Program-made: the position numbers and the translations under genes | Assembly (NCBI RefSeq): GCF_000315625.1 | Contig: NW_005434669.1 | Span: 775,138-839,137, forward strand | Source of the DNA: Guillardia theta CCMP2712 | Lineage: Eukaryota > Protista > Cryptophyta | Direction: 5' to 3' | Length of the DNA stretch: 64,000 nt | The notes under the pieces: generated by a model | The model's database searches: none | What the model was told of the DNA's origin: nothing | What the model saw: the letters and a program-made list of their open reading frames with translations, nothing else | Shown here: in pieces, positions 770-60,838 of the stretch | How positions within the stretch are numbered: the first letter of the stretch is position 1 | How the letters are laid out: every line of letters begins with the position of its first letter

Positions 770-2075
770 CAATTGGCCCGCCGGGGGCCGGCCCGGGACA
801 CCGTGACAGGCCGCAAGTTGAACTTCCGCCTTCAGTTCCGATCGCCGAAGTTCCCGGAGTCCGGGCCCGGGCCGGGGACTTCAACTTCCGAGTTCGCCGC
901 CGGCGCGGCGGGCCGGGTCCGAGCCCGACCCGGTGCCGGACTCCCAGGCTCGCCCGGCCGACCGTCGGACGGTCGGCACCGTCCGGTCTCAGACTGGGCC
1001 GGCGGCCGGGCAGTGGCGGCCGGGGCCCCCGGCAGCCGAGCTCGGAGTACCCGGCCGTACGGTAGTACCCGGCCGGTACGCCGCCGAGTACCGGGTACGC
1101 CGATAGCCGGCCCGGTTGAACTCCTTTACTCAAAGGTAACGTAGTAAACTGTTCAGTACGAGGACACTACTCAGTGACTACCGGGCCGTAGTACAGTGAG
1201 TAAACCCTAACTGTGACGTGACTTAAACCGTGGCCGCGGCCTAACTTGAGGGCCGGCGGCGGCCCGGCCGCCCGGCGGCCCGGGGGCCGCCATACTAAGT
1301 TGAACCCGGGATCGGACCGGCCGCCGAAGCCCAGTACGGTAGGTTCGGAGCTTTCCAACTACGGCCACTGATGTTATCCGACGCACTGTACTACCGTACG
1401 GTAGGCCGGGAAGACTCAGTCGGGAAACTTCCGAAAGGTCTCTGCGACTTTGACCACAGCGGCCTGACTCAGTGAGGGAAGGGAAGGTGGTGCCACGGTG
1501 CGCAAAGCCTTCAGAGCCATCGCCAAGGGGTCCCCCTGAGAAACTCCCGTGGTGGCCGAAAAAGCCCGAGTCTCTCCGAGCGCCTGATCATCACGGTTTC
1601 AGAAATACCTTACCGGCCTTTACTCAAAGTTAAGTTAAAGATCAGTACGAGGACAATCAGGAGAGTCGAGGAGGCTTGACCCTGACACTGTCGCACAGGC
1701 CAAACGGCGAGAAGAGAAAAGACAGCGAGAACCCAAACTTAACTGATACCTTCACTTAACGGCGCGCAGGACAAGTCCCCCGCGCGGCCATGCCCCGGCC
1801 TGGTCACACGGTGCTCAAAGTTGAGTTGAAGTTAAGTTAAAGATCAGTACGAGGACAATCACTGAGCTCCTGATTGTACGGTCCGACCGTACCGTGATTT
1901 TTCACTTACCGGGCCGAAGTCGGACCGTCGGACTCTGTGACGGTCAAGCCCGGTTTGACCCCCCCGGCCCGGCGGGCGGTGGCACTGTGACGGCGGTCAG
2001 ACGGCGTGCCGGGCTCCGACATGACTGCTGAGTGACTAGTTTGCTCCACTTATGGCTGAGTGCGCGACCGTGAGA
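770..2075. repeat. GC-rich palindrome island 1 with three copies of the 42-bp motif
   Basis: Dense CCGG/GGCC/ACSGT/CTSAG/GTSAC words and no credible ORF. Motif copies at 1125-1166, 1619-1660 and 1814-1860. Confidence 0.8.
1619..1660 (+). repeat. Consensus-like copy of dispersed 42-bp motif TTTACTCAAAGTTAAGTTAAAGATCAGTACGAGGACAATCAG
   Basis: Related copies at 1125, 1814, 12434(-), 12740(-, partial), 12932 (degenerate), 41613(-), 59350, 59448, 60002, 60100, 60650 and 60743. Confidence 0.9.
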
Positions 2076-2375
2076 CTCAAGATAGAGGGCTAGTGAAGGG
2101 GAGACGGGCAAGACAAGGAAACCACCTCTTTTCGGCTCAAATGAAAGATACACCTTTGTCATCAAACATCTGAAAATGCATCTTCTCGAGGCATAAGCGA
2201 CACTAGCCCTGCTCCCGTGAGCAGGTCTCCCCTACTGACTCTCTCGTCCTGATCTTATAGAGGCTCACGACGAGAATCACATCCCGCTCGCCACGCCCAC
2301 ACGTTGATCTCCTCTCCCTCATCTTTGCGATCCCATTCTTGTCACTCAGATTCGCCGAGAATACCTGATACACTC

Positions 2376-2924
2376 ATGACCGAAGACAGCTCTGCAACTG
2401 TTCAGCTCTTCCCCCGTCGCAAGCTTGGCGACTCCGACATCCCCCAGCGAGGTCGTGCTCCTCTCACCATAGACCTCCCCGTCATCCAGTCTCTCTTCAG
2501 CATCCCGCAGGTCGAGGCCTGCAAGGTGCTCGGGGTCTCCTTGACGGCGATGAAGCAGCTTTGCCGGAAGCTGGGGGTCAGCCGCTGGCCCTACACCCGT
2601 CCTTGCACCACCGGACGCCGCCGACATAGAGCGAGGAAGTCAAAGCCCGACACCCAGCCTGAGCAAGCCAAGCCCGTGTGCGAGGAAGCGGTGGCAGACT
2701 GCCAAGGGAAGCAGGAGCTCGAGTCTGCCAGCTCAACGTCACCTGGCTCGTTGTCGGAGGACGACAGTGCTGTAGAGGACGCGGAGGCGTCAGGGGGTTC
2801 TGTAGTCGAGCCGACAGCAGCAGAGGAGGAGGTAACAGAAGGGAGCTGGATGCCGAACACGGGGTGGATCGACTGGTACATGGAGTGTGGAGACGAGGAA
2901 GACGTGTCTCAGAGGCTAATATGA
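2376..2924 (+). CDS. RWP-RK domain transcription factor, copy 1 (intronless)
   Basis: IQSLFSIPQVEACKVLGVSLTAMKQLCRKLGVSRWPY is an RWP-RK signature. First in-frame ATG at 2376, acidic C-terminus, TATA-like CTTATAGAG near 2253. Confidence 0.88.
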   Translation: MTEDSSATVQLFPRRKLGDSDIPQRGRAPLTIDLPVIQSLFSIPQVEACKVLGVSLTAMKQLCRKLGVSRWPYTRPCTTGRRRHRARKSKPDTQPEQAKPVCEEAVADCQGKQELESASSTSPGSLSEDDSAVEDAEASGGSVVEPTAAEEEVTEGSWMPNTGWIDWYMECGDEEDVSQRLI

Positions 2925-3534
2925 TTGGATTCTACGGAAAGTATTCCAGATTACGTCCAATGTAGCGGTTTGTTTTTTATTCCTTTTATTCCTTTTGGTT
3001 TTAGTAGAAATTCTTCCTGAAGTGTCTGTTGAGCTCAAATCAAGGCTCTTCATGAACTCTGCAGTTGCGTTAGCGAATTGCATCGCAATTTCCCGTTTTG
3101 CTAGTCTGCGATCGTCTTCAAACACTTTGACAGCGGAGGCTCATCAGGAACTAAGGTCTCGTTACTCAAAGGCGGTGTGAGGTCGGAGCGTTTGTTCCGA
3201 GACGAAGTTGACCCTTTTAACTGTAACAGTTCACGCCGGGGGCTAATGACCCATTGTTTCCGAACAAATGTCTTTTCAATCTCTATACTCTACATGGATA
3301 TCAGACGATGTGTTTTTTTGAAGAGGTCCCGCCCCAGAAACAGTTTCGAAGTTGCACGGCCCCCCCCCCAAATTGAATCGATGTATGTTTCCTATAAGCC
3401 ATGGATTACCACACAAAAGGGAGGCCGAAGAAACCCAACGATTCATATCTTAGGCAGGGAATAGGAGGAGAGGTCACCACCAACCCTTAAAATTAAAACC
3501 TTAGTTTAGCCCTCCCCGTTCTCTCCAACCAAGA

Positions 3535-4122
3535 ATGCCCCATCCGATCCTCCCATCCACTGTTCAGCTCTTCCCCCGTCGCAAGCTTGGCGACTCCGAC
3601 ATCCCCCAGCGAGGTCGTGCTCCTCTCACCATAGACCTCCCCGTCATCCAGTCTCTCTTCAGCATCCCGCAGGTCGAGGCCTGCAAGGTGCTCGGAGTCT
3701 CCTTGACGGCGATGAAGCAGCTTTGCCGGAAGCTGGGGGTCAGCCGCTGGCCCTACACCCGTCCTTGCACCACCGGACGCCGCCGACATAGAGCGAGGAA
3801 GTCAAAGCCCGACACCCAGCCTGAGCAAGCCAAGCCCGTGTGCGAGGAAGCGGTGGCAGACTGCCAAGGGAAGCAGGAGCTCGAGTCTGCCAGCTCAACG
3901 TCACCTGGCTCGTTGTCGGAGGACGACAGTGCTGTAGAGGACGCGGAGGCGTCAGGATCCGAGCTAGGAGAGCTTTGTGCCCAGGGGGAGGAGGGGTCTG
4001 TAGTCGAGCCGACAGCAGCAGAGGAGGAGGTAACAGAAGGGAGCTGGATGCCGAACACGGGGTGGATCGACTGGTACATGGAGTGTGGAGACGAGGAAGA
4101 CGTGTCTCAGAGGCTATGCTGA
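3535..4122 (+). CDS. RWP-RK domain transcription factor, copy 2 (near-identical duplicate with different N- and C-termini)
   Basis: 3559-4116 is almost identical to 2397-2918 apart from a 36-bp in-frame indel and about 2 substitutions. Confidence 0.75.
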   Translation: MPHPILPSTVQLFPRRKLGDSDIPQRGRAPLTIDLPVIQSLFSIPQVEACKVLGVSLTAMKQLCRKLGVSRWPYTRPCTTGRRRHRARKSKPDTQPEQAKPVCEEAVADCQGKQELESASSTSPGSLSEDDSAVEDAEASGSELGELCAQGEEGSVVEPTAAEEEVTEGSWMPNTGWIDWYMECGDEEDVSQRLC

Positions 4123-4483
4123 GTGCGATGAACGATGAACCAGGCGATACGGAAGTGTTCCTATGTTCTTTTATTTTCAGTATTAGTAGTTGCATCGAGC
4201 AAGTTCCTTGATGACTTGAAAGTTTTGATTTTGTTAACTTGTGTAGGGATTTGTGGGCTGGGTGTTCTCTACATTAATCTTGAGAGTATAGTTTTGTAAA
4301 TATCACATAATCTTTGACTGCACAATGACTTCATTGGCACGCCTTCGTCTGCATTCACTCGATTTCTTCGTGGTTTTCACTCATTCTGGTTTTCACCACT
4401 AATTCATAAGTTTGACTGAAAAATCGACGCAGAAGAAGGAATCAATGATTCAAACAATTGGGGGATTGAGTTGGATTCACTTA

Positions 4484-5795
4484 TCAGGTATTTCTGCTCT
4501 GCAACCAATGCACAAACGTCTGATGCGAGTTTTCCATGTCTCGTAGAAATTCACGAGTTTGATTCTAAATTTACCGTGAGCAAAGGCGAGTGTCTGGAGA
4601 ATTTGAAAGGTTCATACCTCATCCAAGACTTCCGTGGCTCTCATTGCGCTGAGAATCTGTATACAGAAGTCATCTCGGGAAACGATTACACTCTACACAA
4701 GATGCTCACCTGCAACCAAGACTTGACTTTCATTTTGGGCTCGAAATCAGCCCTGAAAGTATCGTGACGCTCATTTGCAGTCGCATATCACTTGCGATTA
4801 CGGTAGTTGGGCAATCTTGTTCAATGCGTTGACAACGTCGGCAGTAAGAGGATGAACCTAGGAAAGGATTGAGTTGAAGCTTGAAAACTTCATGTGTATT
4901 AGTCACTTGATCCACCGCTGTCATCCCGAGACGCAGAGAATCCATGAGCTGTCGAGACGGAAGATCAGCGACTTCGAGCAGCTGTAGAGCCTAAGAGCTC
5001 ACCGTGATAAAACCTTGAACTGCTTCTGCCACAAAGAGTGCAATCTTGCTCGAGTCTTCACCGCCGCCGGCTGAGCACGTGGCAGGAACCCCTGAACCTC
5101 GTTCAGGAAGTGGGTCGGCATGCGGCAGGGTTGGCCCTCACCTGTTGCGAATCTGTTTGCAGCTCGTGCGGCTTTGAGCTGGTATCTTGCAAGGGCATGA
5201 CAACATTGAAGGCTCATCCTCTCACCTTACCTTGACATGAACGTGGGGATCGCCATTGCGGGATTCTGTGAACCAAGCTTCTCAGAGGTGATCGGGTGGG
5301 AGCCAGAGAAAAAGTCTTTAAGCATAGACACAAGTCAACCTGCATGTCGCTGGGGAGGCACTCTTTGAGTGTAGAGAATCGAGGAAGGAGTTTCTGACAT
5401 TCCTACATTCCAGATCACGGATGGAGATAATGGTCATCTAGCAAAGACGTCTCTAACCTTCTCATACACATCTGGTGCTATGGTGCCTCGGATGTACTGT
5501 GTTTCAAGTTTTTCCATGGTTCTAATGATAGCGTAATAGTCCGCGAAGGATTCCATTTCTTGCCTAACAAGGATTAGATTGTCTAACCCAGAAGGACATC
5601 GACAAGCACCTGTTTGAGTCATCTTCTACTTGTAGCTGTTTCTCTAGCTCTTTCTTGATGCTTGGACTTGCTTTGCTTGCAAGCATTCTCGAAGAATCAT
5701 TCTGCAAAGTTATGTAAAACCATCAAATATCTGATGGTAAAAGAATTGAATCTGCATCTCACTTGAGCATGGGCGCCAACATTGTTTTGAGCCAT
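4484..5795 (-). CDS. VPS28: ESCRT-I subunit Vps28 (about 11-12 short exons)
   Basis: Spliced exons give ESFADYYAIIRTMEKLETQYIRGTIAPDVYEKECQKLLPRF, AANRFATGVPAT, LMDSLRLGMTAVDQVHPL and DFEPKMKVKSW. Introns are GT-AG, about 50 nt. Confidence 0.88.
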
Positions 5796-6217
5796 CTACC
5801 ACAAATTCATAAGCTTGCATTAGACACGAGTTTGCATACTCGAGCATTAGTAACACTATACGAAGGAGGAGGTGCACGATATGCTGCCATGCTTCTTGAT
5901 TTCCAAGTTCTACAGCGCGCGATTGGAAGATTTCATGTGTGCGAAATTTTCCTGGAATTCAGTCTTATCAAGAACACATCCTTTCAAGATAGGCAACATA
6001 ACAGCACTTCCACCCTTTCTCACTCCAACTTTGATTTGAGATTATCCTCTCCTCTTTTCTGAACTCCCTCCCTCCTGTCCCATTCTCTCCGCTTCCCATC
6101 ATCGCTGCTCCCGCTTCGCTACAGCTGCTGCCATGGGCATTTGTAGCATGTTACAAATGCCCGTCGGACAACTTGAAACTTTCTCCAACAATTTGAAAAC
6201 TATGGAAGATATTCGAC

Positions 6218-6240
6218 CGGGCCCAGTAAAGGGCCGGGCC
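6218..6240. promoter_or_regulatory. Site-II-like GGGCC(C) elements in the VPS28/RPS14 divergent promoter
   Basis: CGGGCCCAGTAAAGGGCCGGGCC. TGGGCY-type elements are typical of plant ribosomal-protein promoters; function here is inferred. Confidence 0.3.
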
Positions 6241-6791
6241 TTCGCCAGTGATGCCCTTGTCAGTTATCAGCAAGGTTATGAGTCCTCATAGCTGGGTGGC
6301 CCTCCTCCCCCAACAGTCCCTTAAAAAAAACCGAGAACGTGCGTGCGCCGCAAGCCAGCAAGAGGTGATGGCGGATGGAGATGGAGAAGGAGGAGGAGAG
6401 GAGGAGGAGATGATGCGACGATCTGATGTTCATGATCTGATGAGCTGAGATTTCATCGTGAACATTGCTGTGATGTGGCTCGGAGACGTTTTCCATATGA
6501 TCAGAACACAGAGGAGGAAGGACGTGGGGTGGATGTGGGGGAGAGGGAATGCGAAGATCGGGCAACTAATTGCTGCACGTCTTGATGTGGACATGATTGA
6601 ATCTAATGCTACTTGTGCGTGAAGCATGAAGATGAGAATTATGTGCTTTATATGTTTTGCTGCAGAGCAATGATGTGTTTTTGTATTACAGCGTATTTGA
6701 TTGTGGAGTTGACCTTGTCTGATATTCTTGTTGAAGTTCGTGTTCGCTTTTGTCTGCCTTGAAGTCTGACGATTATTGCAGCAACTGAACA

Positions 6792-7241
6792 ATGCCCCCC
6801 AAAGCTGAGAAGAAGGAGGAAGCCGCCGTGTCCCTCGGACCTCAGAAGAACGACGGAGAGCAGGTCTTCGCCGTCGCTCACATCTTCGCTTCCTTCAACG
6901 ACACTTTCGTTCACGTTACTGATTTGACCGGACGTGAAACTCTCGTCCGTGTCACTGGAGGCATGAAGGTTAAGGCGGATCGTGACGAGTCCTCCCCGTA
7001 CGCTGCTATGCTTGCCGCCCAGGATGTTGCCACCCGATGCAAAGAGCTCGGCATCACTGCCTTGCACATCAAGATCCGCGCTACCGGTGGAGTCAAGACC
7101 AAGACTCCTGGACCAGGAGCCCAGGCTGCTCTCCGCTCCCTTGCCCGTTCCGGCATGAAGATCGGGCGCATTGAGGACGTTACTCCCGTCCCCACCGATT
7201 GCACCCGAAGGAAGGGTGGTCGCCGTGGTCGCCGTTTGTAA
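6792..7241 (+). CDS. RPS14: 40S ribosomal protein S14 (uS11)
   Basis: [23 protein letters not shown]...[20 protein letters not shown]...[11 protein letters not shown]. Confidence 0.98.
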
Positions 7242-7449
7242 GAGAGGAGCGCTCCTCTCGGTCTCGGCTGCGGGATCAGTACTTGTTCAGTCGCGCACGA
7301 CGGCAGCTCAACAAGAAATTCATGTTGTTTTTCTCCTTCCCTGATGCTCCCTGGCGTGCTATCCGTCCTCTTTATTCTCTAGTAAACGGATTTGGCTGCA
7401 ATTTCATTGCTGATTCTGGGGACCCCAACCTTACAAGCTTGTAGACAAA

Positions 7450-8830
7450 CTCGTTGTCACTTCCGTTGCACTATTCCACGACTGTGTGAGATTGGTCAAC
7501 TAACAAAGATACGAATAGACCTGATAGACAGTCCATGCCATCATTACCTGTGCATCTCTTGATTGGACCTGTAAATTGTCGGTACGCTCCCATGAAATGG
7601 ATTCATGATTCACCTTCTTTGTGATTATCTTCGCAACATCTCTTTCTAAATTTCCATCTTTGTACAGTATGGCAATTTTTTGCATTAAAGATGTCACCTG
7701 CCATTCAGTTTGAGTCAAGAAAAAAATTCTCGCTAAAACCTCGGCATCTGTCGGCTTCGAAGGAGACGATTTCTAACCATATCAGCGTCAGATACAACCT
7801 CAGCGGGCATCAATTGATTTACCTTTGTTGATGCGGACAGTGAAGATCGTTTTGATTCAGGAGCACGATGATCGGATCGACTGGTTTCAGCTTCAAACTT
7901 TTTCTTTGGCAGATTTTGAGGCTTTTCAGTGAATGTGGGCGATGTTTACCTGCTTCTGGAGCTTGACAAGGGTGAATCTTATGAGCAAGTCATTCGCAAG
8001 CAGTGGCGCCATCAGTTTGGCAGTGAACTGACCCGTCCTGACCACGTCTGTATGATGGTGTTGCTGGCTCTGTGAAGGCAACTGTCAGCTTAAGATATGC
8101 AGGGCAACGAGGGAGGACCGTAACATTCTTTTCGCTTGCTGCGAGAGGTTCCTGTAAGATCTGCATTGCAGCAGCAGGAGCTCAACCAGTCAGTCCCCGT
8201 GGAGAACTGCTGTCGCATCGTTCACCTGTCGTGTCGAGGGGCGCAGTGTTGCCGCTGCTGTAAGGGTTATCACAACTCAATAACAAGCATGAGGTATGGC
8301 AAACCCGAGATGTCGCAGGCCAGAGGAGCCGTTCGCTGACCAACCCAGTAAGAGAGGACATGGGGAACTGAGCCTTACATGATCCTCGATGGTGACTTGT
8401 TGCACATTGTCATTGACACTTTCAGATTGAGAGCAGGCGTCACGGCAAAGATTTTGAAAAAGGAACAATCTCACCCACAGCAGCCTAGCATGTTTGATCG
8501 TGTCTCCTTCTCCCATTCTATCAGGCTATTTTGAATCCACTCAAGCATCATCAGACGAGACTGATTGGAACATGATCCAGTTGGCGACACGACCCCTTTT
8601 TCGGGGTATTAACTGAGTTCGTCCATTCCTGTAAACATACAGCAATTCATCAGCAGGGTAACTTGTAAATGATCCGCTCGGAACACACGATCGGACTTTA
8701 CTCCTGACAAAGATTTTGAACGGTCCATCTGTTCACTCTGCGTGAGATTCCTTTTCCTGACTTGCGTCCGACTTGCACTGCGGACAGTATTTCCCTATTT
8801 CTGTCTGCTTTCTTTCTTGTCTGATCCGAT
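7450..8830 (-). CDS. Hypothetical multi-exon protein (boundaries uncertain)
   Basis: Several minus-strand GT donors and AG acceptors with short coding-like segments (e.g. LMQKIAILYKDGNLERDVAKIITKK). No recognised domain. Confidence 0.35.
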
Positions 8831-9019
8831 CCTTCTCCCGGCGCGGCTGTGCGGCTTAATACCGTAACTGCTTGAGTCTCTATACTATGATACCAAGTAG
8901 CGGCTGAGCGGCACCGCGGCAGTGACTTATGATCCGCCGCATCAACTTCAGCGCCGCCGAGCCCCTGGAAGCGCTGCGCAGCTGTGGCTACTTCTGTACT
9001 CTTCGCCCTTTTCTCCTTA

Positions 9020-9215
9020 CAACGGTCCCCCGGACTCACCCGTCAAACTTTGAAAAGAAAAGCACGTAAAAGAGTCTTCAGTCAGCGTGACTCACTCAGT
9101 CACTCGGGCCTGACTGAGGGCCCGGGCCCGGCGGGGGCCCCGGATTATCCAGGCCGGGTCCGAGCGGCCCCGAACGGACCGTGTCAACCCGGGCCGGTGA
9201 CCCGACACGTCAGAT
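9020..9215. repeat. Small GC-rich palindrome island 2
   Basis: TCAGTCAGCGTGACTCACTCAGTCACTCGGGCCTGACTGAGGGCCCGGGCCCGG uses the same word vocabulary as the other islands. Confidence 0.65.
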
Positions 9216-12404: not shown

Positions 12405-12990
12405 CCCTCCGAGGCTCCCGGTGAGTCTCCGCCTGTCCTCGTACTGTTTTTTCACTTAACGGAAGTTTGAGCGCCTTCAAAAGCGCCACTGCCGGTAGTC
12501 ACGGTACCGTACGGTCAGTACTGACCTGGGGCGCCGCCGCGCGGCCGGGCCGCCGGCCGTACCGGCCCCCCCCGGCCGATCCGGTGACCGCGGGCCGGGC
12601 CCGCCGCCGCCGGGCCGCCGCCCGCCCGGCCGCGCGACTCTCAATGGGCCCCGCCGCCCGCCGGGGGCGGACTCCGAGAGTCCCCGATCACCGGGTCCGT
12701 CGCCGGGAGCCACAGGCTCAGTGAGGCCCCGGCTCACGGTTAACTTAACAGGCTTTGAGTAAAGTTCCAAAGTCCGGTCAGGACATAACTAGGCTCTTCT
12801 TTACGCTAGGCTAGTTTGGAGTAAAACCCCGGCGGGCCGGGGGCCCAGCCTGGCCCGCGGCTGAGGGCCTGGCCTCACTGATCGCCGTACTGAGTCCAGT
12901 TGAGTAAAACCTCACGGTTAACCGGGCACTCTTTACTCAAGATTAGTTAAGTCAAAATTAGTACCGAAAGAGGAGACCGATGAGCACGTT
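12405..12990. repeat. GC-rich palindrome island 3, bounded by outward-facing motif copies
   Basis: Motif on the minus strand at 12434-12471, a partial minus copy at 12740-12763 and a degenerate plus copy at 12932-12976. Confidence 0.8.
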
Positions 12991-19726: not shown

Positions 19727-20739
19727 AGGAGAAAATCGTTTGAATGGTGTTGACGGGCGTAGAAAGGAAAATTCAGAAAGGCCCCTGCAGTACGAGAGAG
19801 GGCTGTATCAATATTATGATCACTGTTGCCTTCAGAACTATCTTGCAATCAACGATGAAAGCTGGCAATGCAGAAGAGCAATGCAGTACAGATAGGAGGA
19901 GAAGGGCAGGCAGGAGCAATGGATAGAGGAGTTGGTGAGTGGGAGTGGGAGCGAGGGAGGAACAGGTGGAGGTTGGATGAAGAGGTAGGAGGCAGTGTCG
20001 GTGTACAGGTGAAGGAGACCGACACCAGTAAAAGAGCACTTGTATCACAAGCCATCCCTAGGGGTAGGGGTATCTTTTTTGTGGGTGATCTACCCTAATT
20101 TTGATTGAGATTTGAGGGGGTACCTATCGTTATGGTGCATGGATTTAGTTCTCAAGGCAAGGTGGGGTATGCTTTACATGCTTTTTCTTTTTTCTGAAAA
20201 GGAAAAATCGATTAGTTGCAACACTACGGGGTAGGGTTATCAAGGGAGGGGTACAGCATATAATTTTGAGTTTTCCCTAATGCTCATATGCAGACTTGAC
20301 ACTATATATATGGTAGTAATATGAAAAGAGGTTAAAGTCTTGACCCCTATAACATTAATGACAAAGTTTTGACGGTATGGGGTAGGGTTCAAGAAAGAAA
20401 GGGGGTAGTCTGTCGTTGTCTTGTCACAGTGAAGAGTCAAAGATAATCCGGGAGGGGGGTGGGTGAATGTGACCCCTGGGGGGCCCTATGAACTTGAGTA
20501 CCCCTTTTTCCCCCAGACAATAGTAGGGTCCACAATGATTCTATTACTGCAAAGGTGACCCCCACCCCCTTCGGAGAACAAAATCTAATTTCGTACCGTA
20601 CAGGCTCGAGACCAGAGAGTACCCCATACTTCCCCTGTCCACTCCAATCATTCGCGACGGTAGGGTCCTTCTAGGCTTCACTTCCTGACTCTTTGCTTGT
20701 TTTTTCCCTTTTTTTCCTTTTGGTGATTTTTACATTTAT

Positions 20740-21100
20740 TGTTCCGAACTTGAAGCCTGAGGCCGAACTTGCTGTCGGACTCTGTGAAGTCACGGGCCGG
20801 TCCGACCGGGCCGGCCCGGCGGACTCGGGCCGAGGCCGCCGGGAACTGACCGAGTCCGATCCCTCGGACCGTCCGGGGGAGTCCGACCGATAAGGTCAAG
20901 GCGCCGGATGCACTGAGACCGTGGCAGTGAGCCGGCGGCGGAGCGCCCGGCCCCTGCTCAGTCTCGAGGGCTGGTCACCGGGTCCGGCGCCGGGCGATCC
21001 GGGGGGCCGGCCGCAGGAGCCCCGGCGACCGAGTCGGACCGTACTCCGGCCCGGCCCGGAACGCGCCGCCGGCTCCCGGCACCCAGGCCGAATTTCACGT
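20740..21100. repeat. GC-rich palindrome island 4
   Basis: Same vocabulary as the other islands. Shares the exact 14-mer GTCGGACTCTGTGA (20774-20787) with island 1 (1927-1940). Confidence 0.75.
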
Positions 21101-21360
21101 GCCAGCATGAGACAACAGAAGTCATGGCGGATAGACGGGAAGAAGAAACACGATAGGAATGAGGTCGAGAAGACGGGAGATTTCACTATATTTGTCATGC
21201 TAGAAGCCTTGAAAAGAGCTAGGCAAATGCATGGACGTAGAAGGAGAGGAGGGTTGAAAAGTAGATGTTGAAAAGTAGATGTTGAAATCGAAGATAGGAA
21301 TATACGACAGGATAACTCTTACGATTGTCGAGCTCAGTTGTTGGCTGCTATTGGGCGATC

Positions 21361-41612: not shown

Positions 41613-41700
41613 CTGATTATCCTCGTACTAAATCTTTACCTAACTTTGAGTAAACACTGCAGCGGCAAAGGATCGGGCCCGGTGGGCCGGGTGCAGTAGC
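41613..41700 (-). repeat. 42-bp motif copy (minus strand, 41613-41654) with a minimal palindrome island
   Basis: Reverse complement reads TTTACTCAAAGTTAGGTAAAGATTTAGTACGAGGATAATCAG, followed on the plus strand by GGGCCCGGTGGGCCGGG. Confidence 0.85.
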
Positions 41701-47269: not shown

Positions 47270-47320
<51 letters not shown>

Positions 47321-47321
47321 A

Positions 47322-47364
<43 letters not shown>

Positions 47365-49200
47365 AAGGAGCAATGCTTGAGCGGATTGAGGGCATGAATG
47401 AGCGGAGGGAATTGTCTTCCAGCCCTCCCCAACTCACCTCGTACTGCCCTGGGCCGGGCCCGGTCGTGTTGTTGGACCTGCAAGGAGTAAGAGAAGTGAG
47501 AGGAGGGGGAATAATTACCTTCTGCCCTTCACGTAGTCGGGGGACACGATGGGCTGGCAGAAAGCGCGGGAGGCGCCAAAATTGAAGTCCTTCCGTGAAT
47601 GGACGGCCTGTTGTCGTTTAATCAACGATAGGACGGACGAAGAGAGAGAAAGAAGAAGAGGACGGAGGGAGAGATGAGCGGTCTTCAGTGTGTTCATGGA
47701 GGGGAGAAGAGGAAGAGGAGGTGGCAAGGATCCAGAACTGGGAAGCGCATGAGGAGCAGGAGGGAGTGATGCGGAGGCTCGGAAGGAGGAGAGGACAAAA
47801 AAGAATCATCTGCGTCCTCGTTTCTCACCAGAAACCCTCGAACGGGGTCATAAGACCCTGGACATGGCGCCGTGGCGCGGCGAGGACGCGAGAATCGTTG
47901 CGACTTGCTCACCATGCCTGTCACAAGCTGAATATCACCCTCGCGTCTACCTTCCCCTTCCATCATTTCACCCTGCACCATCCTTCCTCCCCCCACCCTC
48001 CTCCTCCTCTCCCAAGCATGATTATCGTCGTAATCATCATTCCCTCACCTGTGTAGCCCTTCACCGACTGAGAGGGATTCGTCTGATTGGTCTGCAGAGA
48101 CGCGCAATGGTGTCATCAAAACCCTTCGGAGATCATTCCTCCAGATGAACCGAACCTGCACCCCCAACTTCTACTCCCCTCGTCGTCCTCCTCCCTCTCA
48201 TTGTATCTATCCTCTCCCCCCCTCCTCNNNNNNNNNNNNNNNNNNNNNNNNNNNNNNNNNNNNNNNNNNNNNNNNNNNNNNNNNNNNNNNNNNNNNNNNN
48301 NNNNNNNNNNNNNNNNNNNNNNNNNNNTCTACTTCTTCTTTGTCTTCATGCAGTTGCTGTATTACTTGCTCCCTCGTCCTCTCCCATGTCTGCTTCGTCT
48401 GTGTTGCTGCTGCACCACCTGTTTGCTTATCCCTTGGTTAAATGCACTGAACACTACTTTATCCAGCTGATCATAAACTCTATAGTGTGACGTTTCGTTC
48501 TTCTTCTTCCCTCTCCTCTCTCTTCCCAGCCTGTGGTTCTTGCATCTTGCTCGTCACGCCACATTCGCCCCTACGCAACACAATGACTCTTAACCTTCCC
48601 GCGCCCCTCCCCCCGCTCCTCTCTCCTCGCCCTCTTATCCCGGCCCCCGCTATGTGGGAGGTGAGTGAATCGCTACTAAACACGACAGAGATTCTCTAGC
48701 TCCTGCGCGTTGTCACCTTTGGTTTGTAGTACTGCCCTGGTCCTGGCAGCTCGTTCTCCGAGTAGGAGAAGCGATGGGTCCTGGTCCAGAAAGCATCTTT
48801 CTCCTTCCCGCCGTCATGCAGGATCTGCGAGGGGACAGGGTCATGGCAGGATGTTCAATCGCTCCTCCTTACTGTTTCAAACTTGGACGGGATGGAGGCA
48901 ACCGATCTCTGCCTTGCTAACGAAGGGTCCATGAAAGCTGCTCGATGTCGCGTCTAGGTGTGCAAGAGCAGAGGCTGGGTCTGGACTCTTATCCAACGAG
49001 TGCGAGGAAACGACTAGCCATGCTGGGAGAAAGCTTCCGCTGCCGCCTGCTGTGTCAACTATAGAGCCCGCAGTATCTACTCGCTAACACCCAAACTTGA
49101 CGTTGGACCATAGACCCGTCAGCTCTTCCTGCAAGCGACAGTCAAGCAGTCCTCTGCTCTCAGCGCTGTGATGCTTGGTTGAAGCTGCATCGATCCCCGA
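44475..49200 (-). CDS. SHIPPO/sperm-tail PG-rich repeat (ODF3-like) flagellar protein, many small exons; 5' end uncertain
   Basis: Repeated PGPGQYY, PCPGSYDP, PGPGQYE, PGPGYYNP, PGPGAYE and PGPAYYNP units in separate exons. Confidence 0.75.
46014..46119. repeat. Intronic (GAG/GAA)n microsatellite
   Basis: Read directly from the sequence. Confidence 0.9.
47178..47364. repeat. Intronic (GAG)n followed by (GAGGAC)n microsatellite
   Basis: Read directly from the sequence. Confidence 0.9.
48228..48327. other. Assembly gap (100 N)
   Basis: Run of N inside a pyrimidine-rich intron. Confidence 1.
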
Positions 49201-54000: not shown

Positions 54001-54289
54001 TCCAAACGATTCTCATCGAAATCATCCACATCGTAGTCATCCCCGGCCCTGGATAGAGAGCCAAGAACGGATAATCAAACATAGAAGCATGCAGCAAGGC
54101 AGTGCGGGTGGCAAGAAGGCAAGGCAGGCAGGCAGGCAAAAGGGAGGAAGATCAAGAAAGGGGGCGGCACCTTTCCAACTTCACCTTGACCTTCTCCTCA
54201 TCGCCATCTCGGTCGTCAGGCTCTTCTCGCTTGATCCCCACTGATGCAATGATCTCCTCCTTGCTCTTGTCTCCATCAACCCCCGGCAT
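51005..54289 (-). CDS. USP39: U4/U6.U5 tri-snRNP protein Sad1/USP39 (zf-UBP plus inactive USP domain), multi-exon
   Basis: CPYLDSINRHILDFDFEKVCSISNSHLNVYVCLVCGKYFQGR...VYCIPDNYEV, PGTVGLNNLKNT, VSPHELFQAI, EKNPTIVSFPIKNLDL and DDLHIQEILPQ. Confidence 0.93.
51721..51883. repeat. Perfect (AGCGGG)27 microsatellite in a USP39 intron
   Basis: Read directly from the sequence. Confidence 0.95.
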
Positions 54290-54869
54290 CTTCCACTGTG
54301 TCAAAACATGAAAATTCCCTGGACTATCTCAGGTATGTAGCAACTACTCTTGTGATTTTCATTCAACCTCAGCATACATCTACCTGACTGCCGTGCTTCC
54401 ACTTCAACAACAACCCATCAAGCAAGGTCTGTAAATGATCGCCTTCTATTTTGCTCTATATGTACATGCTGAGGCTCAGGTTTCATGGACCCCTGCCTTT
54501 GCGATGAGCTCTTCTATGATAGACTTAGCACACTTTATGTTTCGGTAGGGCTCTCAACATTTCTTCTTATTGGTATGCACCAGTTTTCATGCCAGTGCAA
54601 TGTCATCTGACTTCTCTTGACCTCGGCACACTACAATCATAATTTTCATCCATTTCTCGTTCGTCTTTTGCTTCTTGCCCGCCATTTGTTCGTGTTTAGG
54701 GCCTTCCGTTCCAGTCCCCATTACTGCCCCTTCTTTATCCTGCAACGTTCCCCTCCCTTCCTGGCGCGTTCTTATCTCCTACCTCTCACACCCCTCTCTC
54801 CCTCCTCTATCCCCTCCTAGCATTCCCATTGCGCGGCTGCAGATCATTCCTTTCATTAGCCTCGTCCCC

Positions 54870-55790
54870 GCTCACACGCGGCGCCGGACCGTAGGCCGCC
54901 TGGTACGGTACTGTAGGCCGCAGGCCCGTTGGCCGGCCGGCACTGCCGGGCCCTCCGAGGCCGACAGGCAGGGCAGTGAGCGGCCCTTGAAGCCTTGGCT
55001 TGAAGGCCGGCGGCCAGCCTGAGGCCCGGACGCCACTGCCGATAATCTCACAGTGACCATACAGTGCCCGCCCCCCGCGGCCGCGGCGGGGGCCCGCCCG
55101 GCGGGCCGCCCGGCCGACCCGGTGACAGTGTACTACCGTAGTGACGGCTCAGTCGCCGCCGAGGCTCCGGCCGCCGACCGTCCCGCCGCGGCGGCCGGAC
55201 TCCGGGACCCGGTCGCTCCAGCCGACCGTCCCGGAGTCCGAGTCCCGTACGGTCCCATTGACGGCCGGGCCCGGACCGTGTACGGTCACAGGCTCACGGT
55301 CCGGCGTGCCCGCCGGGCCGGGCCCGGCCGCCGCCCGGCGGCCGGCCGGCGGGGGCCGAGTGTAACTTGCTAGTCACTTGAAAACCGTCTGGCAACTAGT
55401 TGAAGACGACCGTCCCGCACGGGTGACCCGTGCGGCCGGGCATCGCACGGTACCGGTCACCCGTGCGAGGACTCGGGTCGGCTGAGTCACTGAGTGCACA
55501 TCCGCGTCCGATCGCCGGGAGTCGGGGGCCGCCCGGCCGCCGCGTGATGGAGTCGGCACGGAGGACTAGTGCTCGGTATAATCCGAATCGAGTCCCCGTC
55601 TCATTGATATGGCACGGTTGTTTGTCACGTTCAAGTTTTTTTTAATCGGATACGTGCCGCATGGGCAAGGGCTGGTACGGTACGGTGCCGTGAGATGCCA
55701 CAACTGATGACAGTCACTAGTAGTGATTGCTGACCAGACACTGTGTGGCGCTGACTGCCTGCTGGTGACCCGAGTCGTCGTTGCCGCCCG
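54870..55790. repeat. GC-rich palindrome island 6 (no intact 42-bp motif seen)
   Basis: Same palindromic vocabulary (CCGTACGG, CGGTACCG, GAGTCACTGAG, ACTAGT). Confidence 0.75.
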
Positions 55791-56451
55791 GGCAAGCCTT
55801 CAGTTGTTACTTTTCGGATGTTACCGAGGGGCGACCCTTTTTGACCTTTTCGTAATACTTCCGAGCTTCAATCGGAGGTCACGTTACCACCACCGTGATA
55901 ACGGGCCGCCCGGCCCCGTAGGGTTCAGCGAAGGGTGGGGTGGTTTTACTTCATCAAGGGTCGACGGGTGCAGGTGGTGGTACGCGTGCCAGGGGCAAGG
56001 GGGTTGTAAAAGGAAGAAGTCGGGGATACAATCATTCGTGCGGGTGAAAAAAAAACGATCACGTAGCAACCTCTGACAGTCAATGACTTTAGATCTCTAG
56101 ATGCAACGGTTCACACTTGCACGTCGGATCTGACTTTGCTCCTGTATGGCGGACCAACCCGCCTCAGTAACCTGACTGAAATTACTGACACTGTTACTGA
56201 CAGGTGAAAATACACAAGTGACAGCTGCATGACGCGATGGCATGATGAAAAAGCAGATGATGGATTCAAGAGGATGAAGTCCTGGCAACGGATCTTCCGC
56301 GTGGAGAAGTGGGGAAAACACCATAGTCTCCTGGAGAACAATAAATTGTGACTTTGCTCTGCTTTCAAACTGTTTTGCTTTGTCACTTTGCTTTGCTTCA
56401 CAGAGTCATGCAAAATAGTTTCGAATTAAGGTTTAAGACAAATTCATTAAA

Positions 56452-57087
56452 TCAATTCCAAATAAAAGGTGCTTCATCTACCTGAGTCAGACCAAATGGT
56501 AAGAACTGGTCTTCCTCTTCCAAATAATAATCTTGAAGGGATGATTCGAATGAGTCCCCGTTGATTACTAGATGTGGTTCGTCGACATTGGCCTGTTCAT
56601 CGTCTTCCGCAAACGGCTGTCTGGTGTTGTCATACCACAGATCACACGACGACTGATTGACAACCTCGCATATATCATCGAAAGTGATATCAACTGAGAG
56701 ATCAGTTGAGCCGCTTTGATGATCATCAGGGGAGCCACACGATAAACTCTCAACGTCCGTTGGCTCGGAAGAGGAGGAAACAGTAGAGGAGAGCCTGGGA
56801 GGCTGAATGGACTGCCTCTTTCTCTTGGGGCCTGGATTAGGTGTCTTGAAGGGCCATCTAGCAATGCCGAGCTTTCTGCATGCTCGTTTGATAGCTGTAG
56901 GACAGATGCCAAGTTCTTGAGACACCGCAACCAGAGGCCTGTCGAAGAAACTTTCCAAAAGTTCTCGAGTGAGCAACACGGGCTCGTCTTGAAGCGAGTC
57001 GTAGAGCTGAGTTTCTTGGGCACGCTTCTTTCGTGGACAGACCATGGCAACTGAGCGACGGTATGTTTTCAAGTTGGATGCTTGCAT
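56452..57087 (-). CDS. RWP-RK domain transcription factor (intronless)
   Basis: LTRELLESFFDRPLVAVSQELGICPTAIKRACRKLGIARWPF. TATA-like CTATATAG at about 57286-57293. Confidence 0.88.
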   Translation of the reverse strand: MQASNLKTYRRSVAMVCPRKKRAQETQLYDSLQDEPVLLTRELLESFFDRPLVAVSQELGICPTAIKRACRKLGIARWPFKTPNPGPKRKRQSIQPPRLSSTVSSSSEPTDVESLSCGSPDDHQSGSTDLSVDITFDDICEVVNQSSCDLWYDNTRQPFAEDDEQANVDEPHLVINGDSFESSLQDYYLEEEDQFLPFGLTQVDEAPFIWN

Positions 57088-57891
57088 CTTTCGGTGTGTT
57101 TCCTGGATAGTGGACGAGACGGATGGTGGTTGATAGATAAGAGAGAGAGAGAAAGAGAGAGCGGTAGGTGTATGAGAGCAAGTCGGAGATGGAATGAAGA
57201 GGAGGAAGTTCAAAGGAGAGGAAGAGCTGAAAGAGGAGAGTGGCAGGCGGGCAGGCGATTGTGGTGGACGGGGAGGATTGCAGGGCTATATAGACAGCGG
57301 GAGTTGCGCACGTCGTGCGGAGGAACACCTAGGAGGCCAATGTCGGTTTGGATATCGGTTTCCAGATTGCCGTGCTGACAGTTCGAACTTAAAAGTATTT
57401 TGAAAGAACTCTGGGGCCCCAAACTCCGAGCGCCGCTCGACTTGCATAAAAACAATTCATGAAAAAGAAGCGTTTCAAAATACTGATGGTCAGCATGATC
57501 GTCTTGAAACAACGTGTTCTGGCGCCTGGCAAAAACCCAGCGCTTCAAATAAACGTGCAGTTATGGATTGGTCATGAACGATCAGAAACCAGCCATGAGC
57601 TATGCGAAACCACGAGATTCCATATTCGAAATCACTTCTTTTGGATACGACCGACCCCTTCCCCCGGCCCAAATTTGTCACACCCCAACACGCTCCACCT
57701 CCCTCACTCCCCGTGCGCCATCCTTAGTACTGACATCCGTCCTCCGCCCCAAACCCCGCCCCTGGACTCTTCTCTTTATATTTGAACAGTTTGCATCAAT
57801 AGTCCACAAGCACTCCTGCTCCTCCAACACAACTGCTAAGGTCGACTCCTCCGAACCGCACAAGCTTTCTTCTTGCTCCTATCTTCTGAAC

Positions 57892-58377
57892 ATGAACACT
57901 CAAGGCCGTCGACGAGTCGCTATGGTATGCCCTAGAAAGCAAACGTCTGAAAATGATGAGCCTGTTATGCTCACTCGAGAGCTCCTACAATCTTATTTCG
58001 ATCGTTCCCTTTCTCAAGTTTCTGCTGAGATTGGAATTTGCCCCACTGCCATTAAGCGAGCTTGCCGGAAGCTTGGAATTGCAAAATGGCCTTACAAAAC
58101 CCCGAATCCTGGTCCTAAGAAGAGAAAGACGAGTGATGCATCCGATCATCAAGCAGAATGTCCATCAACCTGGGATCAGTGCATATGCACACAGCAAAGC
58201 ATGCAGGCATTTCCCAGCCTCCCGCTAGCAAAGGACCCTTTCGAAGAAGAGCGAAATCTATGCTTCGAACAGATCAGAACAACAACTTCATGTTACTATG
58301 AAGACCTGGACCTGGAGCAGTGCTTGCTGATGGAAACAGACATTGCTTTTCACTGGAATGATACAGAATTTTTTTGA
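57892..58377 (+). CDS. RWP-RK domain transcription factor (intronless), divergent paralog of 56452-57087
   Basis: LTRELLQSYFDRSLSQVSAEIGICPTAIKRACRKLGIAKWPY. Shares VAMVCPRK and KTPNPGPK with its neighbour. Confidence 0.88.
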   Translation: MNTQGRRRVAMVCPRKQTSENDEPVMLTRELLQSYFDRSLSQVSAEIGICPTAIKRACRKLGIAKWPYKTPNPGPKKRKTSDASDHQAECPSTWDQCICTQQSMQAFPSLPLAKDPFEEERNLCFEQIRTTTSCYYEDLDLEQCLLMETDIAFHWNDTEFF

Positions 58378-58893
58378 ATTTGTTTAAGATTATGTGAAAT
58401 AAATCATATGAATTGTTATCGAGTTCACCGTAAAAAGGCCTCTCAAATACACGAGAGCGCATTCCTTGTAGGTTCTGCTCTAGAGTGGCAATAGGCAGAA
58501 GTGCGTCACGTTGTAGATTGAATCTGACAGGGACACAGCGGCTGAGGCACGGTGAGTCCGCCGCAAATCAGTGATCTAGCTTTCCGAGGCCCATCTCAGT
58601 CATCATGGCATCGGACATCTCAGCGGCGTCGTGTCCTTTGTGGCCTTCGTGTCCTTCGTGGCCATCATTCCAAGTTCTGGTGCTGGATGGTTCCGGTACG
58701 CGTCTCCCCGGCTCAGTCACCGTCGGCCGCCCGGCAGGCCCGGCGGCTGAGTGGGCGGGCCGCCCGGCTGAGTCGCCGACTTGCGGCCCGCCCGCGCCTC
58801 GGAGTGGGCCGGGTGCCAGTGCCCGGCCCAGTGCCAGTGCTTCAGTCCGATCAGGCGGCCCGGGGCCCCGGGGCCGCCGGGGTGACCGTCACG

Positions 58894-60838
58894 GCGGGAA
58901 CTTTCCGGCTGAGTACCACGGGTGACGCCCCTCAGCCGCGGGGAGTCCGGCTCGGGCCGCGGGCACTGTCAGCGGCACCGTGGCACCGTACCGTCCGCCC
59001 GGCCCAGCGGCCCCGGCGGACTCGCGGGGCACTGCACGGCCCGGCCTGGCGTCCGACCGTCAGGACCATTCTGCCAGCCTGGGGTCACTCGGACGGCAGT
59101 GAGCCTCCCCGGTGGCATACCTGACTCGGGCACTGTCCGATCATCGCGGCGATCGGCGGTCGGCGGCGGCGGTCCGATCAGCGGCTCCGAGGCTCGCGGG
59201 CTGACCGACTCACGGTACTTCACCGTGACGGTACTAATGACTGCCGCAACAGCCGTCCGATCGGGCCGGCCGCAGATCGGACGGAGATTCCGAACTTTCC
59301 GAGTTCGGACACTGCGGTCACCAAGTACGGTCACCGGCCGGGCGGTGGCCTCAAAGTTAAGTTAAAAATGAGTACCGTCGAGGACAATCAGCTCAGTTTT
59401 AGCTAGCCTGCCCTGCCCTCCGGCAGTGTAGCTGAGAGTCCCCTCAGTTACTCAAAGATAAGTTACTTGAAAATCAGTACGAGGACAGCTGAGAGTAGCC
59501 TAGTACGGTCAGGAGTACCGTCAGCCGGTAATGAAAAGAATAGTCAAGCGGGAACTTTCCGGCTGAGTACCACGGCCCTCAGCCGCGGGGAGTCCGGCTC
59601 GGGCCGCGGGCACTAGCGGCACCGTCACGGTGGCACCGTACCCGGTCCGCCCGGCCCAGCGGCCCCGGCGGACTCGCGGGGCACTGCACGGCCCGGCCTG
59701 GCGTCCGACCGTCAGGACCATTCTGCCAGCCTGGGGTCACTCGGACGGCAGTGAGCCTCCCCGGTGGCATACCTGACTCGGGCACTGTCCGATCATCGCG
59801 GCGATCGGCGGTCGGCGGCGGCGGTCCGATCAGCGGCTCCGAGGCTCGCGGGCTGACCGACTCACGGTACTTCACCGTGACGGTACTAATGACTGCCGCA
59901 ACAGCCGTCCGATCGGGCCGGCCGCAGATCGGACGGAGATTCCGAACTTTCCGAGTTCGGACACTGCGGTCACCAAGTACGGTCACCGGCCGGGCGGTGG
60001 CCTCAAAGTTAAGTTAAAAATGAGTACCGTCGAGGACAATCAGCTCAGTTTTAGCTAGCCTGCCCTGCCCTCCGGCAGTGTAGCTGAGAGTCCCCTCAGT
60101 TACTCAAAGATAAGTTAAAAATCAGTACGAGGACAGCTGAGAGTAGCCTAGTACGGTCAGGAGTACCGTCAGCCGGTAATGAAAAGAATAGTCAAGCGGG
60201 AACTTTCCGGCTGAGTACCACGGCCCTCAGCCGCGGGGAGTCCGGCTCGGGCCGCGGGCACTAGCGGCACCGTCACGGTGGCACCGTACCGTCCGCCCGG
60301 CCCAGCGGCCCCGGCGGACTCGCGGGGCACTGCACGGCCCGGCCTGGCGTCCGACCGTCAGGACCATTCTGCCAGCCTGGGGTCACTCGGACGGCAGTGA
60401 GCCTCCCCGGTGGCATACCTGACTCGGGGTGACTGTCCGATCATCGCGGCGGTCGGCGGTCGGCGGCGGCGGTCCGATCAGCGGCTCCGAGGCTCGCGGG
60501 CTGACCGACTCACGGTACTTCACCGTGACGGTACTAATGACTGCCGCAACAGCCGTCCGATCGGGCCGGCCGCAGATCGGACGGAGATTCCGAACTTTCC
60601 GAGTTCGGACACTGCGGTCACCAAGTACGGTCACCGGCCGGGCGGTGGCCTCAAAGTTAAGTTAAAAATGAGTACCGTCGAGGACAATCAGCTCAGTTTT
60701 AGCTAGCCTGCCCTCCGGCAGTGTAGCTGAGAGTCCCCTCAGTTACTCAAAGATAAGTTAAAAATCAGTACGAGGACAGCTGAGAGTAGCCTAGTACGGT
60801 CAGGAGTACCGTCAGCCGGTAATGAAAAGAATAGTCAA
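58894..60838. repeat. Tandem array of three ~650-bp units (654, 648, 643 bp) within palindrome island 7 (about 58540-60838); two 42-bp motifs per unit
   Basis: Units start with GCGGGAACTTTCCGG at 58894, 59548 and 60196, and end with AATGAAAAGAATAGTCAA. Confidence 0.95.

What the first reader, a model, noticed from the sequence alone, without database searches (positions are those of the whole stretch)
1125..60778. Dispersed conserved ~42-bp motif found only at palindrome islands: candidate recognition or target signal
Seen: consensus TTTACTCAAAGTTAAGTTAAA(G/A)ATCAGTACGAGGACAATCAG. Copies lie at 1125-1166(+), 1619-1660(+), 1814-1860(+), 12434-12471(-), 12740-12763(-, partial), 12932-12976(+, degenerate), 41613-41654(-), 59350, 59448, 60002, 60100, 60650 and 60743(+). 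The motif is AT-rich inside GC-rich DNA and was never seen in genes. Its two ends (TACTCAAAG and AGTACGAGGA) are the best conserved parts, and the spacer between them varies more. Inference: it is a protein-binding signal, such as an RSS/att-like site, a transposon end or a chromatin/replication/recombination organiser, that localises the cut-and-repair activity. I do not recognise it as a described element.
Basis: partly seen in the sequence, partly recalled or inferred. Interest (0 to 1): 0.88.

Follow-up and report, generated by a model that had tools for sequence, protein, structure and literature searches.

The report
Tail end of a LINE retrotransposon
The repeated 42-bp motif is the last stretch of a 4.35-kb LINE-type retrotransposon of the alga Guillardia theta, left behind about two thousand times as very short, cut-off copies that cluster at GC-rich palindrome islands; this is an ordinary kind of mobile element, not a new recombination signal.

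Summary
Every listed copy is present, and a strict form of the motif occurs 760 times in the 87-Mb genome, against 2 for the control.

The motif is not a free-standing signal. Read on the opposite strand, it is the 3' terminus (…CTTTGAGTAAA) of a 4352-bp non-LTR retrotransposon.
- **Element:** it has one 1348-aa ORF with a reverse transcriptase, followed by a CCHC knuckle and a restriction-like endonuclease. The closest structures are R2 proteins (Z 7.5-8.9).
- **Truncation gradient:** copy number falls steeply from the 3' end: 2155 (last 18 nt), 760, 260, 75, 12, and 2 at the 5' end.
- **Boundaries:** the 3' boundary is sharp and the 5' boundary varies. 14% of copies have 7-10-bp target-site duplications, against 0.7% in shuffles.
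- **Tandem copies:** six of the thirteen window copies come from one ~650-bp segment duplicated three times.

The link to the islands is real but not exclusive. 37 of 60 sampled copies lie within 100 bp of an island (20% expected), 12 of 60 have none within 1.4 kb, and two islands in the window have no copy. The islands are unique in sequence and not LINE-derived, so I infer a preference for, or better survival in, these sites.

The parts
1619..1794 (-). 5'-truncated LINE copy (element nt 4149-4352 with an internal deletion). The motif at 1619-1660 is its 3' terminus read on the + strand.
   Evidence: BLAST to the full copy L044:5497-9848, 86% identity over 204 columns; alignment with long copies
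1402..1619 (-). Older, diverged fragment of the RT-coding region of a related LINE (element nt 2056-2221). It abuts the 3' end of the copy above.
   Evidence: BLAST, 75% identity over 218 columns, E 2e-33
1125..1166 (-). Short, diverged 3'-terminal LINE copy (both anchors intact, middle diverged) inside the island 705-1449.
1812..1862 (-). Short 3'-terminal LINE copy that lacks the last 4 nt and has a small internal duplication.
12423..12471 (+). Short, diverged 3'-terminal LINE copy at the left edge of island 12472-12740.
12740..12763 (+). Last ~24 nt of the LINE (…TTAACTTAAC…CTTTGAGTAAA) at the right edge of the same island.
12932..12976 (-). Degenerate short 3'-terminal LINE copy.
41613..41654 (+). 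Short 3'-terminal LINE copy (element nt 4311-4352, 88% identity) next to a weak GC-rich patch.
58894..60840 (.). Three tandem units of ~650 bp. Each unit is a unique GC-rich island plus two short LINE tails.
59350..59391 (-). LINE tail A, unit 1 (element nt 4311-4348).
59448..59487 (-). LINE tail B, unit 1 (element nt 4316-4351).
60002..60043 (-). LINE tail A, unit 2.
60100..60135 (-). LINE tail B, unit 2.
60650..60691 (-). LINE tail A, unit 3.
60743..60778 (-). LINE tail B, unit 3.
48228..48327 (.). Assembly gap (100 N). It is not part of the feature and lies 6.6 kb from the nearest copy.

Best explanation
The motif is the reverse complement of the last ~42 nt of the 3' UTR of a non-LTR (LINE) retrotransposon of Guillardia theta.

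**The element.** It is 4352 bp long and has one 1348-aa ORF. The ORF holds an N-terminal region with no recognised DNA-binding domain, a reverse transcriptase, a CCHC knuckle and a restriction-like (PD-(D/E)XK) endonuclease.

**Inferred mechanism (from the R2 paradigm).** The protein nicks chromosomal DNA. It uses the freed 3'-OH to start reverse transcription at the very 3' end of its own RNA (…CTTTGAGTAAA). Synthesis usually aborts after a few dozen nucleotides.

That is why the genome holds about 2000 copies of the tail with one fixed end and one ragged end, but only a handful of full elements. So the motif is conserved because it is where every insertion begins, and probably because the RT must recognise it. 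It is not conserved as a host signal.

**Link to the islands.** Insertions are not specific to a sequence: only a purine-purine bias follows the 3' end. They are, however, several-fold enriched and locally clustered at unique GC-rich, palindrome-dense intergenic islands. I infer that the element prefers these islands or survives better there. I do not think it makes them.
For: **Shown**
- The boundary on the TTTA side is sharp in 30 of 30 loci, while homology on the other side has variable length.
- Long copies are 98-100% identical. They extend to 4352 bp, have no terminal repeats, and carry an intact 1348-aa ORF on the strand opposite to the motif.
- Pfam RVT_1 scores 33.1 bits against a 29.6 cut-off, and all 9 aligned homologues hit RVT_1.
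- CCHC and D…D…K motifs are conserved in the alignment.
- The C-terminal model best matches the knuckle and endonuclease region of R2 proteins: Foldseek top 4 hits, then VIA-align top 6 hits at Z 7.5-8.9, 140-178 residues aligned, rmsd ~4 A for five of the six and 8.1 A for 8gh6. Prp8 endonuclease-like domains and PD-(D/E)XK nucleases come next.
- Copy number falls with distance from the 3' end: 2155, 760, 260, 75, 12, 2. Controls give 0-12.
- Target-site duplications of >= 7 bp occur in 14% of copies, against 0.7% with shuffled flanks.
- The 3' flanks share only R-R.
- Island enrichment: 37 of 60 copies lie within 100 bp, against 20% expected, p = 3e-12. GC-rich bins are 2-4 times enriched within ~400 bp on both sides. 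7 of 12 young long copies have an island in their 3' flank.
- At least 14 of 61 loci hold more than one copy within 3 kb.
- The islands are unique in the genome and not homologous to the LINE.

**Inferred**
- RT recognition of the 3' tail, and abortive TPRT as the cause of the extreme truncation.
Against: - No experiment or RNA 3'-end mapping shows that the LINE RNA ends at GAGTAAA. The raw RNA reads were too few to show ends.
- The 3' UTR fold is no more stable than shuffles (z = -1.3).
- 86% of copies show no clear target-site duplication.
- The model of the endonuclease domain is of medium confidence (mean pLDDT 59.5), and the Foldseek E-values are only 0.009-0.05.
- The island enrichment was measured against random positions of one window. 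It was not measured against intergenic DNA only, so part of it could come from both features avoiding genes.
- I could not compare the element with Repbase or Dfam.
Confidence: 0.9

Rival explanations
1. The motif is a stand-alone protein-binding recombination signal (RSS/att-like) or the terminal inverted repeat of a DNA transposon or MITE. It would direct cutting and rejoining at the islands.
For: Some copies lie in inverted pairs a few tens to ~190 bp apart, for example 12423-12471(+) with 12932-12976(-) around an island. Tail-to-tail pairs occur in L012, L058 and L078.
Against: - The full element has no inverted or direct terminal repeat.
- Only one side of the motif is a boundary.
- The steep one-sided truncation gradient and the RT ORF on the opposite strand fit a LINE, not a TIR.
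- In a list of 100 sites, nearby pairs are convergent, divergent and tandem in equal numbers, 3:3:3.
Confidence: 0.02
2. The short copies are tails of a SINE-like non-autonomous element, and the GC-rich island is its body.
For: Most copies are only 35-50 bp long. Many abut an island on the LINE's 5' side, and several 5' boundaries cluster near the stop codon at element nt 4178-4205.
Against: - Island sequences are unique in the genome: a 496-bp and a 721-bp island found only themselves or their local tandem copies.
- All-against-all BLAST of 30 loci found no shared body beyond the LINE itself.
- Islands flank copies on both sides.
Confidence: 0.03
3. The islands are made, or enlarged, by the element. 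Repeated abortive TPRT, template switching or RT-assisted repair of breaks would lay down short tails plus de novo palindromic DNA, so the tails mark the process that builds the islands.
For: - Copies cluster several to a site.
- Very short tail fragments (GAGTAAA words) are enriched in and near islands: 7 of 10 against 2.2 expected.
- Truncation is extreme.
- Most copies lack target-site duplications.
- The islands match nothing else in the genome.
Against: - Two of the six larger islands in this window have no tail and no GAGTAAA word.
- 20% of copies have no island within 1.4 kb.
- Copies with clean target-site duplications sit next to islands like the others.
- No known RT activity makes hundreds of bp of odd palindromes.
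Confidence: 0.05

Closest known systems
R2 non-LTR retrotransposons (R2Bm, R2Tg; PDB 8gh6, 9dou, 9nl2, 8iby)
   Same: Both have a single ORF with the order RT, then CCHC knuckle, then C-terminal restriction-like endonuclease. R2 proteins are the best structural match for the C-terminal 220 residues (Z 7.5-8.9) and the only PDB sequence hit for the RT (8gh6, E 0.03). Both show TPRT-type footprints and a 3' end that defines the element.
   Different: R2 inserts at one site in 28S rDNA through N-terminal zinc-finger and Myb domains. This element has no recognisable N-terminal DNA-binding domain and no conserved target sequence. It is dispersed about 2000 times. Sequence identity to R2 is only 10-12%.
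Other endonuclease-bearing early-branching LINE clades (CRE, NeSL/Utopia, R4/Dong, Hero), as reviewed in PMC4640811
   Same: They share the domain architecture. They also tend to insert into repetitive or special DNA rather than at random.
   Different: Those clades target defined sequences: spliced-leader genes, U2 snRNA genes, rDNA or microsatellites. Here the preferred sites are unique sequences that share only composition and palindrome density. Clade assignment was not tested because no reference sequences were available for a tree.
Mammalian L1 'dead-on-arrival' 5'-truncated copies
   Same: Both show a fixed 3' end, a ragged 5' end, variable target-site duplications and far more truncated than full copies.
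   Different: L1 uses an APE-type endonuclease and a poly(A) tail. Here the tail is a specific sequence without poly(A). Truncation is also far more extreme: most copies are under 60 bp, and the ratio of tails to full elements is roughly 1000 to 1.

Membership tests
Non-LTR (LINE) retrotransposon | Encodes a reverse transcriptase | tested here: met
   Pfam RVT_1 at 33.1 bits (cut-off 29.6), residues 592-735, with GDP and YADN boxes.
Non-LTR (LINE) retrotransposon | No long terminal or terminal inverted repeats | tested here: met
   Self-BLAST of a 3.65-kb 5'-truncated copy (L043) gives only the identity hit. The ends of four near-full copies differ from each other.
Non-LTR (LINE) retrotransposon | Constant 3' end with variable 5' truncation | tested here: met
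   Copy counts run 2155, 760, 260, 75, 12, 2 from the 3' end to the 5' end. The 3' boundary is sharp in 30 of 30 loci.
Non-LTR (LINE) retrotransposon | Target-site duplications of variable length | tested here: met
   7-10-bp duplications in 14% of 72 copies, against 0.7% with shuffled flanks. Most copies show none.
Restriction-like-endonuclease LINEs (R2 supergroup) | C-terminal CCHC motif followed by a PD-(D/E)XK nuclease | tested here: met
   C-x2-C…H…C and D…D…K columns are conserved among 9 homologues. The predicted alpha-beta-beta-beta-alpha-beta core aligns best to R2 C-terminal domains at Z 7.5-8.9. The model is of medium confidence.
Restriction-like-endonuclease LINEs (R2 supergroup) | Single ORF without an APE endonuclease | tested here: met
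   One 1348-aa ORF and no other Pfam domain at E <= 0.1.
Restriction-like-endonuclease LINEs (R2 supergroup) | Sequence-specific target site | tested here: not met
   The 72 3' flanks share only purine-purine at +1 and +2. Flanks are unrelated to each other.
R2 clade proper | N-terminal zinc-finger/Myb domains and insertion into 28S rDNA | tested here: not met
   No N-terminal domain was found. Copies are dispersed over at least 200 of the 669 contigs.
DNA transposon TIR / MITE | The same sequence inverted at both ends of a unit, with a fixed-length duplication | tested here: not met
   The other end of the element is unrelated. Orientations of neighbouring copies are mixed.
RSS / att-type recombination signal | Recognised and cut by a dedicated recombinase at the motif border | not testable with these tools
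   No recombinase is linked to the motif. The LINE model accounts for its whole distribution.

The most novel reading that the evidence does not exclude
The element may choose its targets by DNA structure rather than by sequence. Its R2-like endonuclease belongs to a class reported to act on four-way branched DNA (PMC6895275). It would be drawn to cruciform- or hairpin-prone palindrome islands, or to breaks that arise there, and would insert there again and again with extremely abortive reverse transcription. The roughly 2000 tails would then be a genome-wide record of where such structures or breaks form.
Probability: 0.12. Interest if true: 0.6.

Novelty: new member of a known kind. Interest (0 to 1): 0.27.

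Why it matters
This removes a supposed new 'recognition signal' from the list and replaces it with a concrete, testable annotation.

- **A young LINE family.** It is probably still active: copies are 98-100% identical and the ORF is intact. It can now be masked and dated in Guillardia theta.
- **Wrong gene models.** The family explains models such as GUITHDRAFT_110080, which is a fragment of its ORF.
- **The islands stay unexplained.** They remain a separate, real and unexplained feature of this genome. The LINE tails are a useful marker for studying them, because they show that the islands are preferred or tolerated landing sites.

Tried and rejected
- **Rfam:** a scan of the whole element at E <= 1 found nothing.
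- **RNA fold of the 3' UTR:** not better than shuffles, z = -1.3.
- **PDB by sequence:** phmmer gave only a weak R2Bm RT hit, E 0.03, so a structure prediction was needed for the nuclease.
- **LINE against the window:** BLAST with 7-nt words found no LINE-derived sequence inside the islands.
- **Islands against the genome:** no other copies were found, which rejects an island 'family'.
- **Literature:** four searches found no description of this element or of the islands in Guillardia.
- **More loci:** The sample stayed at 60-72 copies.
- **Raw RNA reads:** run X22 gave too little depth (0-15x) to map transcript ends.
- **Not done:** a clade-level tree of the RT, for lack of reference sequences.
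Full report
**1. The observation**

Both halves of the motif recur in the window far beyond chance. There were 9 and 3 matches at up to 3 mismatches, and none in 100 dinucleotide shuffles. The anchors CAGTACGAGGACA and TACTCAAAG gave 10 matches each, against 1.3 and 0.4 expected.

Reading the sequence confirms every listed site.

The window is G000:C5:775138-839137 of an 87.1-Mb, 669-contig assembly. A protein hit names the organism as Guillardia theta CCMP2712.

Genome-wide, the strict pattern CTCAAAG-N8-30-AGTACGAGGA occurs 760 times, against 2 for the reversed control.

The assembly gap at 48228-48327 is 100 N. It lies 6.6 kb from the nearest copy, so nothing here depends on it.

**2. Anatomy of the repeat**

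I oriented 30 positionally sampled loci on the motif.
- The sequence before TTTACTC is unrelated in all 30.
- The sequence after …GAGGACA continues to be shared for variable lengths.

One fixed end and one ragged end is the signature of a retroelement tail read on the wrong strand.

Extending the longest copies gave a family that is 98-100% identical over 641 bp, then 2.1 kb, 3.6 kb and finally 4352 bp (L044:5497-9848). The element has no terminal repeats.

On the strand opposite to the motif, it carries one intact ORF of 1348 aa (L044:5637-9683). So the motif is the reverse complement of the last ~42 nt of a 165-nt 3' UTR that ends …CTTTGAGTAAA.

**3. What the ORF is**

- **Reverse transcriptase.** Pfam finds RVT_1 above its gathering score (33.1 against 29.6 bits). 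All nine aligned homologues hit it too.
- **C-terminal motifs.** Distant homologues from metagenomes (21-26% identity) share a C-x-C…H…C knuckle followed by D…D…K columns, as in a PD-(D/E)XK nuclease.
- **Fold.** An AlphaFold model of residues 1038-1311 has mean pLDDT 59.5, with 70-85 in the core. Its core runs alpha-beta-beta-beta-alpha-beta.
- **Structural matches.** The top four Foldseek hits are R2 retrotransposon proteins (E 0.009-0.05). On realignment, the top six are R2 C-terminal domains at Z 7.5-8.9 (140-178 residues; rmsd ~4 A for five, 8.1 A for 8gh6). Prp8 endonuclease-like domains and small PD-(D/E)XK nucleases follow.
- **PDB by sequence.** The only hit is the R2Bm RT.

The element is therefore a LINE that bears a restriction-like endonuclease, of the R2 supergroup in the broad sense. 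No N-terminal zinc-finger or Myb domain was detected.

**4. Footprints of target-primed reverse transcription**

With up to 2 mismatches, 18-22-nt probes placed at increasing distance from the 3' end give these counts:

| Position of the probe | Copies |
|---|---|
| Last 18 nt | 2155 |
| 35-nt motif (exact anchors) | 760 |
| 60-82 nt from the end | 260 |
| 330 nt from the end | 75 |
| 2 kb from the end | 12 |
| 5' end | 2 |

Controls gave 0-12.

In 79 mapped copies, most start at element nt 4303-4318, so they are only 35-50 bp long.

Target-site duplications of 7-10 bp flank 14% of 72 copies, against 0.7% when the flanks are shuffled between copies. Examples are L004, L010, L028 and L064.

After GAGTAAA, the next two bases are purines in about 80-88% of copies. 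Beyond that, nothing is conserved. The element is therefore not site-specific in sequence.

**5. Relation to the islands**

The islands are real. In 2.65 kb of island DNA, odd palindromes with arms of at least 5 occur 39 times, against 7.1 +/- 2.5 in shuffles. Even palindromes occur 22 times, against 6.6 +/- 2.3. A 3-kb control stretch shows no excess.

The islands are unique sequence. A 496-bp island found only its own two tandem neighbours, and a 721-bp island found only itself. They are not LINE-derived.

Copies are enriched at them:
- 27 of 60 overlap an island and 37 of 60 lie within 100 bp, against 20% for random positions in this window, which is itself rich in islands (p = 3e-12).
- GC-rich 50-bp bins are 2-4 times enriched out to ~400 bp on both sides.
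- 7 of 12 young, long copies have an island in their 3' flank.
- Copies cluster. At least 14 of 61 loci have a second copy within 3 kb, where about 1.6 are expected. In a list of 100 sites, 18 are in pairs less than 300 bp apart.

The link is not exclusive:
- 12 of 60 copies have no island within 1.4 kb.
- The islands at 20732-21188 and 54840-55560 have neither the motif nor the word GAGTAAA.

My reading is that the islands exist independently, and that the LINE lands or survives there preferentially.

One caveat applies. The background was not restricted to intergenic DNA, so part of the enrichment may reflect shared avoidance of genes.

**6. The window copies**

- **1619-1794:** a 176-bp truncated copy. 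A diverged RT-coding fragment of a related LINE abuts it at 1402-1619.
- **Short or degenerate tails:** 1125-1166, 1812-1862, 12423-12471, 12740-12763, 12932-12976 and 41613-41654.
- **59350-60778:** the six copies here are two tails per unit of a ~650-bp segment triplicated in tandem.

**7. RNA evidence**

Contigs from runs of three separate studies cover most of the element. These runs are listed as 'RNA?', which is a guess.

They show seven joints that skip 48-63 nt, with CT..AC ends on the LINE sense strand. Read on the antisense strand, these are GT-AG introns.

One joined form, searched as a 30-mer with up to 3 mismatches, is absent from the genome. The joint is therefore made at the RNA level. 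The spliced antisense RNA has no ORF longer than 126 aa.

This is a side observation. It does not bear on what the motif is, and the raw RNA reads were too few to map ends.

**8. Comparison and verdict**

The element works like R2-type LINEs and shares their architecture. It fails the defining features of the R2 clade proper, namely the rDNA target and the N-terminal DNA-binding domains. It also fails the sequence-specificity typical of its supergroup.

I file it as a new member of a known kind, with two reservations. I could not consult Repbase or Dfam, and four literature searches found no description of it.

An earlier first-stage note on another part of this genome (s1-435498) proposed 'scars of extremely abortive TPRT' for fixed-end micro-insertions. 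My tests agree with that reading.

The motif itself is ordinary. What remains of interest is the roughly 1000-to-1 ratio of tails to full elements, and the preference for palindrome islands.

Noticed in passing
L044:6180-9300 (LINE ORF; full copy at G000:C22): Contigs from runs of three studies show seven 48-63-nt introns with GT-AG ends on the strand antisense to the LINE ORF. Six of the seven lengths are multiples of 3. The spliced antisense RNA has no long ORF, and one joined form is absent from the genome.
   Followed up: partly
window 20732-21188 and 54840-55560: GC-rich, palindrome-dense islands with CpG observed/expected of ~1.1 and no LINE tail. The 54840-55560 island matches nothing else in the genome. 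Their origin remains unexplained.
   Followed up: partly
L012:1499-1716, L058:1472-1751, L078:1415-1543 and L026: Pairs of LINE tails with their 3' ends facing each other across only 11-39 bp of spacer. This suggests repeated hits on both strands of one small target. Genome-wide, convergent, divergent and tandem pairs are about equally common.
   Followed up: partly
window 1402-1619: A 75%-identical fragment of the RT-coding region of a related, older LINE lies directly against the 3' end of the younger copy at 1619-1794. This suggests nested insertion and more than one subfamily.
   Followed up: no
P0002 (GUITHDRAFT_110080): An annotated 'hypothetical protein' of G. theta is 100% identical to 42% of the queried part of the LINE ORF (residues 480-1348), so this gene model is a retrotransposon fragment. 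It also carries a precomputed Pfam hit, PF24536, which I did not examine.
   Followed up: no
L044:2545-3230 and 4440-5144: Two ~700-bp segments, 96% identical, lie upstream of a full-length LINE copy. They are another local duplication or repeat family.
   Followed up: no
window 60821-60894: A 36-bp tandem repeat (2.1 copies, 97% matches) lies directly after the triplicated island/tail array.
   Followed up: no
the motif itself (TTAAGTTAA): The middle of the motif is itself an odd palindrome with a G/C centre. This is the same word type that fills the islands, and it may be coincidence.
   Followed up: no
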